DNA from: Octopus sinensis
Taxonomy: Eukaryota
Length of the DNA: 64,000 nt
Assembly: GCF_006345805.1 (NCBI RefSeq)
Contig: NC_042998.1
Location: 96,410,001-96,474,000 of the forward strand
Reading direction: 5' to 3'
Each line of letters opens with the position of its first letter. Positions within the stretch are counted from its first letter, which is position 1. Below are positions 9,376 to 54,967 of the stretch, piece by piece. Under the pieces are notes generated by a model. The model saw only the letters and a program-made list of their open reading frames with translations, searched no databases and was not told where the DNA came from. Made by a program: the position numbers and the translations under genes.

Positions 9376-9985
9376 TTCAAATTTTGGCACAGGACCAGAA
9401 ATTTCGGGGGAGGAGGTAAACCGATTACATCGACCCGCCATTGCTCAATTGGTACTTCTTTTATAGGCCCCAAAAGGATAAAAGGCAAAGTTGACTCCGG
9501 CAGCATTTGAACTCAGGACGTAAAGACGGAAGAAATGCCGGCCGCTAAGCATTTGCGTGGCGTGCTAACGATTCTTATTTCTTTACTGCCCACAAGGGGC
9601 TAAACACAGAGAAGACAAACAAGGACAGACAAAGGGATTAAGTCGATTATATCGACCCAAGTACGTAACTGACACTTAATTTATCGACCCCGAAAGGATG
9701 AAAGGTAAAGTCGACCTCAGCGGAATTTGAACTCAGAACGTAGCGGTAAACGAAATACCTATTTCTTTATTACCCACAAGGGGCTAAATACAGAGGAGAC
9801 AAACAAGGACAGACAGACGGATTAAGTCGATTATATCGATGCCAGTGGGTAACTGGTACTAATTTATCGATCCCGAAAGGATGAAAAGCAAAGTCGACCT
9901 CGGCGGAATTTGAACTCAGAACGTAACGGCAAACGAAATACCGCTAAGCATTTCGTCCGGCGTGTTAACGATTCTACCAGCTCGC
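9376..9985 (-). mobile_element. Head-to-tail trimer of SINE family A
   Basis: Three successive cores (gaatttgaactcag at about 9505, 9723 and 9907) with junctions at about 9575 and 9760. Confidence 0.85.
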
Positions 9986-27784: not shown

Positions 27785-28059
27785 TACAAATTTCTATGTT
27801 AAAGCGAAGATACATTATGTTATGTTCTTTTATTCTTTTAATTGTCTCAGTCGTTGGACTGTGGTCATACAGGAGCAGCTCCTTGAAGGATTTAGTCAAT
27901 TAAATCGCCCCCACCAGTGTTTATTTTAGAAGCGGCACTTAGACAAACCAACGCCTGTGCAAACACATAAACGAAGATACACACACGCATATATACTTAC
28001 ACAGATACATAGATACGCTCACACACATACATATTTTGCTTACATAATTTGGCATGAGA

Positions 28060-28450
28060 CCAGCGATTATGAGAAAGAGGGAAGTCTATTAGATCGACCC
28101 CCAGTCATCAACTGGTACTTATTTTATCGAGCACGAAAGATAGAATAGTAAAATCGACCTCGGCGGAATTTGAACTCATTTTGTCTGCCTTGCTAACGAT
28201 TCTGCCAAGCTCGCTGCCAACATATATATATATTGCTTTCACAATTTGGCACAAGTCCAGCAATTTCGAGGTAGAAGGCAAGTCGGTTACATCGACCCCA
28301 GTACTCAACTGGTACATATTTTATCGATCCCGAAATGATGAATGGTAAAGTTGATCTCGGCAGAATTTGGACTCAGAACGTAAAGGTGGAGCAGACAAAA
28401 TGCTCATAAGCATTTTGTCCGGCGTGCTAATGATTTTGTCAGCTTGCCGC
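28060..28450 (-). mobile_element. SINE family A, two copies
   Basis: Cores ggcggaatttgaactca (~28165) and ggcagaatttggactcagaacg (~28360). Confidence 0.75.
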
Positions 28451-28497
28451 TTCCCATATACATACATACATACATACATACATACATACATACATAC

Positions 28498-28596
28498 AAA
28501 AACTTTCCAGAAGTTCATCATTTAAATATATATGAGCATGTCTAGATATGCAACTATATGCATGAGAATACATACATAAAACATACAAATCTGCAC
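28498..28596 (+). mobile_element. 5'-truncated 3' stub of the RLE retrotransposon at 53738-54741, embedded in (TACA)n
   Basis: Encodes KTFQKFII* (stop 28523-28525), then a 3' UTR nearly identical to the reverse complement of 53738-53840; (TACA)n on both sides. Confidence 0.85.
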
Positions 28597-29499
28597 ATAC
28601 ATACATACATACACACACATGCACGCATGCATGCATTCATACATACATACATACATACATACATAATACCATACATACATACATACATACATACATGCAT
28701 GCATGCATGCATACATACATACATACATACATGCATACATACATACATACATACATACATACATACATACATACATACATACATACATACAAAGTGATCT
28801 CAATTAAAAACTTTCATCAGAATTTCATGTTAATTCATGTTCTAAAAACCAGCTTAACAATGCTGAAGTTAGTTTACTGAATACCTAATTATTTTATAGT
28901 TTATTTGAAACAAAGGCTGTGTAACTCATTAGAAATATGATAGCGTATTAAAGCTGCTTGCAAAGTGCATAAATAAGATTATATTCGACTTCCGGTGCAC
29001 CTCGATGTCAAATATATACGTGAACAAGTGGTTTTGTTATTCAGTGAACTGTATTTAGTGCGTTTTGTATCGTGCTAATTTACAGTTTCTTTAAACAAAG
29101 CATTATCATCTGGAGTTAGAATGCCTTATATGTATGTATATTGAAATTTCAGCCACTAAAACCGCTTTAAGTTTTCCCTATGCATTCATGTAATGTAATG
29201 TTACTTACTGGCAAGTTATTCACTCAGTCACGAATATTCTCAATCACGCACGTGCCTACATACATACATACATACATACATACATACATACATACATACA
29301 TACAAGAAGGGAATTATATAACACTCCTTAGAACATATCAATGAATAAAACTTTTTAAACAAGGGTACGAATATGTGTGTGATCTTGTGTGTGTGTGTAC
29401 ATAGACACAGACACACAGGCATACACACACACACACATACATACATACATACACAGACACACATACATATATGCATATATGCATACATACATGCATACA

Positions 29500-37926: not shown

Positions 37927-38510
37927 AAGCGGTGAGCTGGCAGAAACGTTAGCACGCCGGCCGAAATGCGTAGCCGTATTTCATCTGCCGTTACGTTCTG
38001 AGTTCAAATTCCGCTGAGGTCAACTTTGCCTTTCATCCTTTCGGGGTCAATAAATTAAGTACCAGTGACGCACTGGGGTCGATGTAATCGACTTAATCCG
38101 TTTGTCTGTCCTTGTTTGTCCCCTCTATGTTTAGCCCCTTGTGGGCAGTAAAGAAATAGGTATTTCATCAGCCGCTACGTTCTGAGTTCAAATTCCGCCG
38201 AGGTCGACTTTGCCTTTCATCCTTTCGGGATCGATTAGATAAGTACCAGTTACGCACTGGGGTCGATATAATCGACTTAATCCGTTTTTCTGTCCTTGTT
38301 TGTCCTTGTTTGTATTTAGCCCCTTGTAGATAGTAAAGAAATAGGTATTTCGCCCGTCGCTACGCTCTGAGTTCAAACTCCACCGAGGTCGACTTTGCCT
38401 TTCATCTTTTCAGGGTCGATAAATTAAGTAAAAGTTGCGTACTGGGGTCGATCTAATCGACTAGCTTCCTCCCTCAAAATTTCAAGCCCTGTACCTATAG
38501 TAGAAAGGAT
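37927..38510 (+). mobile_element. Head-to-tail trimer of SINE family A, young
   Basis: Full copy 37927-38160 (ggcggtgagctggcag head, gagttcaaattcc B box); junctions gaaatag|gtatttc at about 38160 and 38345; ends in (TTA)n. Confidence 0.9.
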
Positions 38511-50019: not shown

Positions 50020-50026
50020 AATAATG

Positions 50027-50079
<53 letters not shown>

Positions 50080-50104
50080 GATAATAATAATGATGATGAT
50101 GATG

Positions 50105-50151
<47 letters not shown>

Positions 50152-50228
50152 CATAATCATAATCATAATCATAATAATAATAATAATAATGATAATAATG
50201 ATGATGATGATGATGATGATGATAATAA

Positions 50229-50298
<70 letters not shown>

Positions 50299-50310
50299 TA
50301 ATAATAAAAT
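50020..50310. repeat. (AAT)n tract with GAT/CAT variant blocks
   Basis: Direct reading; source of the poly-I and poly-N/D ORFs. Confidence 0.95.
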
Positions 50311-51345: not shown

Positions 51346-51598
51346 AATAATGATGATGATGATGATGATGACGATGATTATGATGATGATGATTTCAAAT
51401 TTTTGGCAAAAGTCCAGCAATTTGGGGGAAGACGCCAGTGCTCAACTGATACTTATTCTATCGATTCTGAAGGATGAAATCAAAGTCGAACTCTGAGGAA
51501 TTTGAACTGCCAACATAAAAACAGATGAAATGCTGCTAAGGATTTGTCAGGTATGCTGACGATTCTGCCAACTCGCAGCCTTAATAATAATAATAATG

Positions 51599-51655
<57 letters not shown>

Positions 51656-51731: not shown

Positions 51732-53737
51732 GGTCGTTATTCTAACCCAGTGAGAATTTTCTTCCGATCGAGTAACCCATCTCGCTCAAAAGGTCCCTGA
51801 ATAAGGGTTGTTTAAGGATCTTGAAAGAAACACCCATGTTTCTAGAGGTGAATTATTCAAAGGACCTCCGGTGCACTTTATACCTACACTGTGTTACGAA
51901 AGAATAATAATAATAACTTCTGATTTAGGCACAACACAAGTGTTTTCGAAGGGAGATGGAGTTCGTCGATATTATGAACCTGAGTACTTGATGGTACTTT
52001 ATCGATCTCAAAAGGATGAAAGACAAAGTTTTAACCCAGCGAAATAAGGACATAAATAACTAGAAAACCACACGGCGTTTATTTAATGCTGCTTCAGTCA
52101 GCTGATAATAAGTACCAGCCATGTACTTGTGCTGCCCTCGGCTCCTCCAGCTGTCACATTCCGGATGTAATATATTCCTCACATTCCTCGAGTTTATCAT
52201 GGCCGAAAGGGTGCCTAAGTCTGCTTGTTACTGTGTAGGCACCTTAGACGATTAGAGTGAAGCATAGAGAAAGCTCAGTGCGTGTTACAAAGTCATATTT
52301 CGCTAGCGAGCAATGGCTAGGACTTTTGGTCTAAATCAGTGTAACTCTTGACCAAAGTCGTTATTAATCTGGACACTGTAAAGATTATTGCAGTATATAT
52401 ATATACACACACACTCTAATGCTGCCAGAATGGTTCTGGAATTACAGTTCTTATCGCAGGTGCATGGTAAAAAATTTTAACTACCAGTATCATTATTCAT
52501 GCAAGCCGTGAGTCATTCTTGAGATTTAGGTAGACGTTATATTAGTAATGAGAGAACTAAACCAATCCTCATCCACTTCCATTACACATTTGGTAAAAAT
52601 GTGTTGAGTCGATTAATATTTATATATTGGAAGTTATTACTGCAGGAAGCGGAAATTGTATCAGCTGTATGAAACTGCAACAAGCTGTTATCATTTAATT
52701 TAATTGTATAATCTCCGGTTTGTAATAAAGTCGTTTCAGGTATTCCTTTAATCGACATTTATTCCAATTTGGATTTAATCTGTTTTAATGAATTCTCAAA
52801 TGTTAATGACTTTCAGAAACATTAATGAATTCACATTGCAAAGATAGAAAGTGAAATATTTATAAAAAAGAAATAGGTAAAATTAGAATTGAGCAGTACA
52901 TATTTATGTAAAGCGTATCAAATCTAATGTTGATCTGAACATAAGAAATGGTTAGGAAATGATCGATATTTTGAATATCAAACACCGGATGAACATGCAA
53001 GTTGAGATTTGTTAGTTTCCTTCATCTTTGAATGGCAATGTTATGGTGAATAAATAAATCTTTTTCTTGGTCATTCATGGTTCGTACTCATAAGGATATT
53101 CTCCATCTTGGATTTAACATTGCTCTTGCATAATCTAGATAACTACAAAATTGATAATAAAGAATACGAAGAAATAAGTATACTATCACACTATAACACC
53201 ACGAAAGACAACGAAGGAACTTCCACGCGGTGACTGAATCTGCTAAAAATAACAACCCAACCTCATTCAAATCACTCTCTACCATTAAAAAATAAAGGAA
53301 TATATATTTACCACAGTCGTGGGTACAAAAATAGAAACGATATGATCATGACTGGAATGTATATTGTAATTTATTTGCTGGGTTTTATGAACAAGAACGG
53401 CTTTTCTTGCTTAGCTTCAGAGATATGACAGTAGCTTTGACTGAATAGACATAATCCCGTCCCAAAGTCTCCCTATATTAGTGAATCATTTGAGATATGA
53501 AACGAAGCCTGACGGAAGAAGTCGGCTTCTAAAGTCGAAATACAGCAATAATTACCATATTCACTTGCAAATCTGCCGGAAAATATTAAGAATGACTATG
53601 CGCATCATTGTGTTCAATCTCACAGTTTTATGTGCCCTTAATAAGTTATACGTTTGTATGTATGTATGTTTGTTTGTATGTATGTATGTATGTATGTATA
53701 TGTGTGTGTGTATGCGCGCGCGCGCGCGTGTGTGTGT

Positions 53738-54741
53738 GTGCAGATTTGTATGTTTGCTTTATGTATATATTCTCATGCATATAGTTTACATATCTAGACA
53801 TGCTCATATATATTTAAATGATAAACTTCTAGAAAGGTTTACAGATTTTTACAGTTCCACTGATGGATTGGATCTGTTGTCTTTGAATTAGCTTTCTCCT
53901 TTCTGGTTTTGAGAAGCCTAATTTGTCAAGATTGGTATTTAGGAAGTGTTACATATCCCAGAGCTCCAATGATTACAGGTAAAAATCTGAACTTGTAATC
54001 TGGATTGAGTAACTACAAATTTCTCAATAGTTCAGCATAGGTGCTTACTTTTCACTGATCTTCGGCTTTATGTTAACATCCGCTGGGCAGCTAATTTCCA
54101 TAACTGAACACAGTTTCACTTCTCAGTCCCAAATCATTATATCAGGTCTGTTGTGCTTACATTTTATTGTTGTCTTCACTGGGGCATTCCACCGTATTCC
54201 TTTTTATTATGAATAGCTATGGCTTCTACCATATTGTGGGTTCTTATTTCTTTGTCCTCGGGATTATCCTTCCGATGGATTTCATTACAGAGTGTCCTAG
54301 CTATAGCATCATGACTCATCGGTAGATAATCCGTGATGACATTTTCGGACAACTGCTTATAATGTGTGATATCTTCAGTGTGAACTCCACAAAATCTGCA
54401 TCTCTATCCCTTTTGTGCATCAGGTACTTGGTTGATATTTCCTGTTCCTGGATTGCAAACGCATACTCTTCAAAGTGGGAGGTAGTAACCCGGCTATTCG
54501 TCCATGATAAACTGATTTGATGATCGATGTTACTATCATCCCGGAGCTTTCTACTAACATATCCATGCATAGTCTTCTGTTCATACAGGTTCATCCTTCC
54601 ATATGATAATACGATGCGGTAGAATGTTGCTTAAGGAACTGCCTCCAAAGTCTTATGATGTTATCAGCCTCATATATGCAAACTTGGTCATGGGATGCAC
54701 TTCGAAACTCGGTGGTTAAAAGATGTTGCCGAAGTGATATT
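53738..54741 (-). mobile_element. 5'-truncated non-LTR retrotransposon with CCHC knuckle and restriction-like endonuclease (R4/Dong-like)
   Basis: Minus strand with frameshifts: SLRQHLL..., QKTMHGY..AIQEQEISTKYL, RCRFC..EDITHIISSC, KHNRPDIMIWD..VMEISCP, PVIIGALG, KICK.F.KFII*; microsatellite flanks include (TACA)n. Confidence 0.9.
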
Positions 54742-54792
54742 TATGTATGTATGCATGTATGTATGTATGTATGTATGTATGTATGTATGTAT

Positions 54793-54967
<175 letters not shown>

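What the first reader, a model, noticed from the sequence alone, without database searches (positions are those of the whole stretch)
53738..54741. RLE retrotransposon apparently specific for (TACA)n microsatellites
Seen: a ~1-kb 5'-truncated element with RT C-terminus, CCHC knuckle and PD-(D/E)xK endonuclease remnants. Its 5' junction abuts (CATA)n, and its 3' end runs into (CA)n(CG)n(TACA)n. The second copy at 28498 has the same context. Known: RLE elements are often site-specific (R4 28S rDNA, Dong TAA repeats). Inference: a family with a tetranucleotide (TACA)n target, which I do not recall being described; it could help explain the abundance of TACA arrays.
Basis: partly seen in the sequence, partly recalled or inferred. 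Interest (0 to 1): 0.75.

Follow-up and report, generated by a model that had tools for sequence, protein, structure and literature searches.

The report
Octopus Dong-like LINE targeting ACAT microsatellites
The flagged kilobase is a dead, front-truncated copy of a very abundant cephalopod jumping gene (a LINE with a restriction-like nuclease) that inserts, always in one orientation, into (ACAT)n = (TACA)n simple repeats. This is a new target for a known kind of microsatellite-homing element, and this scan has already met it several times in this genome.

Summary
Window 53738-54741 (minus strand) is the last ~1 kb of a ~4 kb single-ORF LINE: post-RT linker, CCHC knuckle and PD..E..K nuclease, all decayed. 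Sense-oriented (ACAT)n lies on both sides. A 98-bp copy at 28499-28596 has the same context.

The target reading is supported. Of 54 independent genomic copies, truncated at many different points, 37 have perfect sense (ACAT)n abutting the 5' junction and 2 have antisense. Background is 1.5-4.3% per strand (p ~6e-38).

In an RT tree the family sits in a clade with metagenome elements flanked by (ACTT)n. The sister clade is flanked by (TAA)n, the published Dong target.

Two corrections:
- The array at the copy's "3' end" is internal in about three quarters of full copies. There it is followed by a 113-bp block and a second (ACAT)n tail. Both window copies lack that block.
- The family does not explain TACA abundance. 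Only 4 of 18 arrays in the window adjoin a copy.

I found no paper giving (ACAT)n as a target of an RLE element. Waldo, an APE-type element, targets ACAY. At least seven earlier notes of this scan reached the same reading on other DNA of this genome. Verdict: a new variant of a known kind.

The parts
53738..54741 (-). 5'-truncated, decayed copy of the LINE. It holds the last ~1.07 kb of the ~3.8-kb body that precedes the internal array.
   Evidence: It is 80-88% identical to more than 40 scored genomic copies, out of 7096 first-look candidates. It aligns to long copies from reference position ~2692 to their end. tblastn matches P0153 residues 842-1096.
54362..54400 (-). CCHC zinc-knuckle remnant (CRFCGVHTEDITH...). 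The last Cys is lost to a frameshift.
   Evidence: The columns C909, C912, H921 and C926 are invariant in 12 relatives. Pfam zf-RVT matches the relatives.
54048..54152 (-). Restriction-like endonuclease remnant (NRPDIMIWD ... EISCPADVNIKPKISEK), interrupted by stops.
   Evidence: P988, D989, E1004, D1010 and K1020 are invariant in relatives. The region is collinear with the R2 C-terminal nuclease.
53738..53831 (-). End of the ORF and the first part of the 3' UTR, ending in ...CAAATCTGCAC.
   Evidence: This end is conserved in all 30 copies examined.
53647..53737 (-). (CA)n(CG)n(CA)n(ACAT)n array after the element body. It is the equivalent of the family's internal 3'-UTR array and here runs straight into unique DNA.
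   Evidence: No 113-bp block is present anywhere in the window.
54742..54797 (-). Sense-oriented (ACAT)n at the 5' junction, read as the remaining upstream half of the target array.
   Evidence: The array adjoining the junction is 59 bp long.
28499..28596 (+). Second copy, severely 5'-truncated: 98 bp of the first 3'-UTR part.
   Evidence: It is 89-93% identical to the ends of long copies.
28458..28498 (+). (ATAC)10 at the 5' junction of the second copy.
28597..28791 (+). Long imperfect (ATAC)n after the second copy. No 113-bp block follows it.

Best explanation
The window holds two dead copies of an old, star-like burst of a Dong-like (R4-group) non-LTR retrotransposon of an octopod genome.

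Anatomy of the full element (~4.0-4.3 kb):
- It has one ORF with no N-terminal zinc finger or Myb domain. The ORF runs RT, linker, CCHC knuckle, restriction-like endonuclease.
- The 3' UTR runs '...CAAATCTGCAC', then (ACAT)n, then a 113-bp block, then '...AATAATGAC' and an (ACAT)n tail.

Inferred mechanism, by analogy with R2 biochemistry and with Dong:
1. The nuclease nicks the (ATGT)n strand of a genomic (ACAT)n array.
2. The freed 3' end pairs with an (ACAU)n stretch of the element RNA and primes reverse transcription.
3. Synthesis often stops early, which gives 5' truncation.
4. The copy ends up inside the array, always with ACAT on its sense strand.

About a quarter of copies, including both window copies, end at the first array and lack the 113-bp block. 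Either priming began on the internal (ACAU)n, or the block was later deleted between the two direct arrays.

What is shown: the domains, the anatomy, the flanks, the orientation, and the identity of tail and target across three related groups. What is inferred: cleavage, pairing and priming.
For: Family and anatomy:
- The 3' kilobase gives 7096 first-look candidates and the 5' kilobase 557. This is the usual LINE truncation gradient.
- Full-length copies start at '...ACTCGAAGCGGCAAGTCGC'.
- Pfam RVT_1 matches at 4e-19 and zf-RVT also matches.
- The best solved relatives are R2 proteins, at 8.5e-24 for a single piece. A profile reaches 7.8e-46 and is collinear from the RT to the C-terminal nuclease.
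- The intact Argonauta relative has no N-terminal domain hit and no conserved Cys/His cluster.

Target:
- 37 of 54 independent copies, truncated at many different reference positions, have at least 10 bp of perfect sense (ACAT)n at the 5' junction; 2 have antisense.
- Background is 1.5-4.3% per strand. The binomial p is 6e-38 and the orientation p is 3e-9.
- In 48 of 54 copies no other copy of the family lies upstream in the locus fetched, beyond the stretch counted as the element, so the arrays are mostly ordinary genomic ones.

3' anatomy.

Block-less copies are not a subfamily. On a star-like tree, with end branches of about 0.05, the label changes as often as when shuffled.

Relatives:
- L069 is flanked by (ACTT)n at both ends. 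L068, L070 and L071 show it at one end.
- 16 contigs carry (AAT)n about 70-120 bp after the ORF, and several also carry it upstream.
- In the tree the octopus RT piece sits in a clade with SH-aLRT 100 together with the ACTT elements and Argonauta. The sister clade (99) is entirely (AAT)n wherever flanks are seen, and includes Bombyx and Haematobia proteins.

Literature: Dong targets (TAA)n (PMC3812793). RLE clades are mostly target-specific (PMC4640811).
Against: - No empty orthologous site was seen. Contigs of related animals stop at the microsatellite.
- 17 of 54 copies lack a perfect array at the mapped 5' boundary. Five of these have degenerate ACAT-like stretches. Others abut a SINE or other inserted DNA, so the mapped boundary may not be the original junction.
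- Target-site duplications cannot be read inside a repeat.
- Clade assignment rests on flank type, a quick tree (LG+G4, SH-aLRT only) and the literature. It does not rest on named Dong or R4 reference sequences, which I could not obtain.
- The hosts of the metagenome relatives are unknown.
- No (ACAT)n-flanked relative from another animal was recovered here.
Confidence: 0.85

Rival explanations
1. The 5' arrays are made during integration and are not recognised beforehand. The reverse transcriptase jumps from the end of one RNA to the (ACAU)n tail of another, or tail-only copies pile up, so any insertion acquires (ACAT)n upstream.
For: Head-to-tail pairs of copies joined by arrays do occur (L007, L037, L045). 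By general knowledge, not tested here, R2 reverse transcriptase can jump between templates.
Against: Most 5' arrays are long, up to about 200 bp. They are preceded by unique DNA and not by the 113-bp block that a jump into a tail would soon copy. Relatives with other tails show the matching repeat at both ends, as published for Dong.
Confidence: 0.07
2. Insertion is random, and copies survive better in microsatellite-rich, gene-poor DNA (passive accumulation, as proposed for Drosophila Waldo near CA repeats).
For: The genome is extremely rich in microsatellites, with 151 TRF rows in 64 kb. The literature describes passive accumulation for Waldo-A and Waldo-B.
Against: The array abuts the junction to the base. 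Orientation is 37 to 2. Enrichment is specific to ACAT, although (TA)n, (CA)n and (TAGA)n are equally common here.
Confidence: 0.04
3. The element is an ordinary non-specific LINE with its own (ACAT)n tail. The window context is a coincidence in a genome where TACA arrays are common.
For: The element does carry its own internal and terminal arrays, so the 3' context alone proves nothing. The background of ACAT arrays is high.
Against: The 5' flank enrichment at p ~6e-38.
Confidence: 0.02

Closest known systems
Dong (R4 clade, RLE-type LINE; Bombyx mori, Anopheles gambiae, Biomphalaria glabrata)
   Same: Both have a single ORF with RT, CCHC knuckle and restriction-like nuclease. Both insert into a microsatellite that is also the element's tail. 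The sister clade of the octopus family is flanked by (TAA)n, the published Dong target.
   Different: The target is the tetranucleotide (ACAT)n, not (TAA)n. The 3' UTR holds an internal copy of the target repeat followed by a 113-bp block. No named Dong reference sequence was compared.
Waldo (WaldoAg1, WaldoAg2, WaldoFs1; R1 clade)
   Same: It targets ACAY microsatellites, which include ACAT (PMC3812793).
   Different: By the literature Waldo is an APE-type element. Here no APE domain is present and the nuclease is a C-terminal RLE. This is convergence on a similar target, not kinship.
R2 (28S rDNA-specific RLE LINE)
   Same: It is the closest solved structure. The RT, linker, CCHC and RLE are collinear with it. 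It is the mechanistic model for target-primed reverse transcription.
   Different: The target is different. A profile of intact relatives matches R2 only from the RT onward, and the intact relatives show no N-terminal domain hit and no conserved Cys/His cluster. By general knowledge, not tested here, R2 reads its target with N-terminal zinc-finger and Myb domains.
Togen (NeSL-related, (TG)n) and microsatellite-specific HERO families
   Same: They are RLE LINEs with microsatellite targets (PMC4640811).
   Different: They use other repeat units and belong to other clades.
'Dong-R4' LINEs annotated in octopus genomes
   Same: This is probably the same catalogue class. It is the dominant RLE LINE of Octopus vulgaris, and the mean recent insertion is about 4.2 kb, like the full length found here (PMC13282606, PMC8967140).
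   Different: Those papers give no target site and no element anatomy. I could not check that their families include this one.

Membership tests
RLE-type non-LTR retrotransposon (R2 group sensu Kojima & Jurka 2015) | Reverse transcriptase domain of the LINE type | tested here: met
   Pfam RVT_1 matches a 345-aa open piece of a genomic copy at 4e-19. R2 proteins are the best PDB matches.
RLE-type non-LTR retrotransposon (R2 group sensu Kojima & Jurka 2015) | C-terminal CCHC motif followed by a PD-(D/E)xK restriction-like nuclease, with no APE domain | tested here: met
   The invariant residues are C909, C912, H921, C926, P988, D989, E1004 and K1020. The region is collinear with the R2 C-terminus. 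No Exo_endo_phos hit was found. Remnants lie in the window at 54400-54362 and 54152-54048.
R4/Dong clade | Placement by RT phylogeny with named R4, Dong and Rex6 references | not testable with these tools
   No named reference sequences could be obtained. Indirect support is a sister clade flanked by (TAA)n that includes insect proteins.
R4/Dong clade | Insertion into a repeated target that matches the element's own 3' end (Dong: a microsatellite) | tested here: met
Dong sensu stricto | (TAA)n target | tested here: not met
   The flanks are (ACAT)n in 37 of 54 copies. (TAA)n arrays occur in the window, for example at 50020-50307, but no copy adjoins them.
R2 | 28S rDNA target and N-terminal zinc-finger and Myb DNA-binding domains | tested here: not met
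   There is no N-terminal domain hit and no conserved Cys/His cluster in 12 relatives. The flanks are microsatellites.
Waldo (R1 clade) | N-terminal APE endonuclease | tested here: not met
   No APE domain was found in the intact relatives.

The most novel reading that the evidence does not exclude
In this Dong-like branch the target may be chosen largely by base pairing between the nicked DNA and the (ACAU)n stretches of the element's own RNA, and not by a protein reading head. The observations that leave this open:
- The protein has no N-terminal DNA-binding domain.
- Tail and target are identical in three related groups ((TAA)n, (ACTT)n, (ACAT)n).
- A quarter of copies end at the internal array, as if priming could start on any (ACAU)n.

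If this is true, the lineage retargets simply by changing its tail, and it would be a naturally RNA-programmable inserter.
Probability: 0.2. Interest if true: 0.75.

Novelty: new variant of a known kind. Interest (0 to 1): 0.4.

Why it matters
Microsatellite-homing LINEs are known, with Dong on (TAA)n as the closest case. This family adds a tetranucleotide target, and a neighbouring lineage uses (ACTT)n. That shows the Dong-like branch has switched simple-repeat targets more than once over short evolutionary distances.

This is useful for two reasons. It explains why thousands of (ACAT)n arrays in octopod genomes are interrupted by the same element in a fixed orientation, which matters for repeat annotation and for microsatellite markers. 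It also offers a natural series of closely related RLE enzymes with different short targets, which is of interest to groups engineering R2-type proteins for DNA insertion.

The finding is not a new kind of system. The copy in the window is dead, and this scan has reported the family several times already.

Tried and rejected
- Pfam on the three longest open pieces of the window copy gave nothing, because they are too decayed. Open pieces from better copies were used instead.
- PDB search with the 265-aa C-terminal piece alone gave no hit. A profile of relatives was needed.
- Rfam search at E <= 1 on ten full-length or related loci, looking for an HDV-like 5' ribozyme as in R2, found only microsatellite-driven false microRNA matches.
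The younger, intact Dong-like ORFs of this genome could not be fetched, and no larger flank sample could be drawn.
- The orthologous-site test gave nothing. Contigs of four runs from other organism labels cover the unique 3' flank, with 0 differences in three and 25 of 345 in the fourth. They stop at the microsatellite, and none bridges a junction.
- The careful mixture-model tree did not finish. The tree cited is the quick LG+G4 one.
- Asymmetry between long 5' arrays and short 3' tails was considered and dropped. Arrays of at least 40 bp occur in 19 of 54 copies upstream and 3 of 19 downstream, on a crude measure, and this is not clearly different.
- The idea that block-less copies are an older subfamily was rejected, because they do not cluster.
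- Literature searches for (ACAT)n or (TACA)n as a LINE target found only Waldo/ACAY. Xiong & Eickbush 1993 and Kapitonov et al. 2009 are not held.

Full report
**What is in the window**

On the minus strand, 54741 down to 53738 is a decayed LINE fragment.
- An intact 1098-aa relative from Argonauta hians (P0153) aligns by tblastn with residues 842-1096 over 54585-53823. The match is split over three frames by stops and frameshifts.
- The CCHC remnant is at 54400-54362. The PD..E..K nuclease remnant is at 54152-54048.
- The fragment begins after the Pfam RT domain of the relative (405-663), so it carries the linker and not the polymerase core.
- Read in the element's sense, (CATA)n lies directly upstream (about 54742-54797). 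(CA)n(CG)n(CA)n(ACAT)n lies directly downstream (53737-53647).
- A second copy of 98 bp is at 28499-28596 on the plus strand. It lies between (ATAC)10 and a long (ATAC)n.

**The family**

The window is G000:C2:96410001-96474000 of a 2.72-Gb assembly. The closest intact proteins come from Argonauta, and earlier notes of this scan call the genome an octopus.
- The 3' kilobase has 7096 first-look candidates and the 5' kilobase of long copies has 557. This is the usual LINE truncation gradient.
- Full-length copies are about 4.0-4.3 kb and begin '...ACTCGAAGCGGCAAGTCGC'.
- All copies fetched are broken. Examples of long ones are L034:1357-5265:- and L066:1087-6297:-. The latter carries a mariner-like insertion.
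- Open pieces give Pfam RVT_1 at 4e-19 and zf-RVT. R2 proteins are the best solved relatives.
- A profile of twelve relatives aligns collinearly with R2 from the RT to the C-terminal nuclease at 7.8e-46.
- The first ~350 residues have no domain hit and no conserved Cys/His cluster.
- A DNA tree of 30 copies is star-like, with end branches of about 0.05. This indicates one old burst.

**The real 3' end**

All 30 copies have (ACAT)n after '...CAAATCTGCAC'. In 21 of 28 independent copies this array is followed by a conserved 113-bp block (for example L016:2472-2584:+ or L006:2598-2710:+). The block ends '...AATAATGAC' and is followed by a second (ACAT)n tail and then unique DNA.

Seven copies, and both window copies, lack the block. 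They do not cluster on the tree, so they are not a subfamily. Either priming started on the internal repeat, or the block was deleted between the two direct arrays. I cannot tell which.

**The target test**

I mapped the 5' boundary of 54 independent copies against three long natural copies. The copies are truncated at many different reference positions or are full length.
- 37 have at least 10 bp of perfect (ACAT)n in sense orientation at the junction, and 2 have the antisense repeat.
- The same measure at random positions gives 4.3% and 1.5% in the loci and 2.5% and 1.5% in the window.
- The binomial p is 6e-38, and the orientation p is 3e-9.
- Five of the 17 negatives have degenerate ACAT-like stretches. 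Others abut inserted SINE-like DNA. So 69% is a floor.
- In 48 of 54 copies no other copy lies upstream in the locus fetched, beyond the stretch counted as the element, so the arrays are mostly ordinary genomic ones. Head-to-tail pairs also occur (L007, L037, L045).

**Relatives**
- A search of protein representatives found 12,429 relatives.
- Metagenome contigs encoding relatives fall into two groups by their flanks.
- L069 has (ACTT)n at both ends. L068 and L070 have it upstream and L071 downstream.
- Sixteen more distant contigs have (AAT)n about 70-120 bp after the ORF, and several have it upstream as well.
- In a quick tree, the octopus RT piece lies in a clade with SH-aLRT 100, together with the ACTT elements and the Argonauta protein.
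- The sister clade (99) is (AAT)n wherever flanks are visible. It includes Bombyx, Haematobia, Pediculus and Diaphorina proteins.
- (TAA)n is the published target of Dong (PMC3812793).
- No (ACAT)n-flanked relative from another animal turned up here.

**Mechanism**

Shown: the domains, the anatomy, the flanks, the orientation, and the identity of tail and target in three related groups.

Inferred from R2 and Dong:
1. The nuclease nicks the (ATGT)n strand.
2. The freed end pairs with (ACAU)n of the RNA.
3. Reverse transcription starts there and often aborts, which gives truncated copies inside the array.

**Comparison with what is known, and novelty**
- RLE clades are mostly target-specific (PMC4640811).
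- Known microsatellite targets are (TAA)n for Dong, (TG)n for Togen, unnamed repeats for some HERO families, and, among APE elements, ACAY for Waldo, AC, TC and TTC.
- Octopus papers list abundant 'Dong-R4' LINEs without a target.
- I found no paper naming (ACAT)n or (ACTT)n for an RLE element. Repbase and Dfam were out of reach.
- At least seven earlier notes of this scan reached the same reading on other parts of this genome. I tested the central claims independently.

**What is not supported**

The family does not account for the abundance of TACA arrays. Of 18 arrays of four or more perfect units in the window, only four adjoin a copy. It is more likely that abundant arrays gave the family room.

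**Limits**
- Contigs of related animals stop at the microsatellite, so no empty site was seen.

Noticed in passing
G000 places listed, e.g. G000:C1:120895710-120898484 and G000:C8:43778052-43780823: The genome also holds many apparently intact Dong-like ORFs. Their open frames run 1200-1350 aa without stops, they are about 33% identical to the Argonauta protein, and the first look found 95,926 candidates. This is a younger family, possibly the 'recently active Dong-R4' of the literature. Its flanks could not be fetched.
   Followed up: partly
L068-L071 (metagenome contigs ERZ1740060 and ERZ1740067): These are intact or near-intact relatives (ORFs up to 1165 aa) flanked by (ACTT)n. L069 has it at both ends. 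I found this microsatellite target in no paper either. The host organism is unknown.
   Followed up: partly
window 9576-9942, 37976-38462 and about 28040-28450: A 184-bp unit, SINE-like by eye, is repeated in tandem or dispersed. One copy ends right at the (ATAC)n that precedes the 98-bp LINE fragment.
   Followed up: no
window 50020-50307 and 51582-51655: There are long (AAT)n/(TAA)n arrays, one of about 96 units. This is the published target of Dong proper. No LINE fragment adjoins them in this window.
   Followed up: partly
L066:1262-2597 (stored coordinates): A mariner-like transposon, judged by eye from its translated ORF pieces, is inserted near the end of a full-length copy of the LINE.
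   Followed up: no
P0250, P0263: Some distant relatives of about 1350-1400 aa carry an OTU cysteine-protease domain (PF02338) besides the RT.
   Followed up: no
L071 and L087, about 90 bp after the stop codon: The (ACTT)n-type relatives also carry a short target-like motif (ATTACTTACTTTC) early in the 3' UTR. This recalls the internal (ACAT)n of the octopus family and may be a shared feature of the branch.
   Followed up: no
window 53300-53646 in runs X1, X3, X8 and X6: The unique flank is identical in three other organism labels and differs at 25 of 345 bases in a fourth. In all four runs the summed depth of contigs over the element is thousands of times that of the unique flank. The tool warns that this sum is no copy number, so it shows only that many similar contigs exist in those animals too.
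   Followed up: partly
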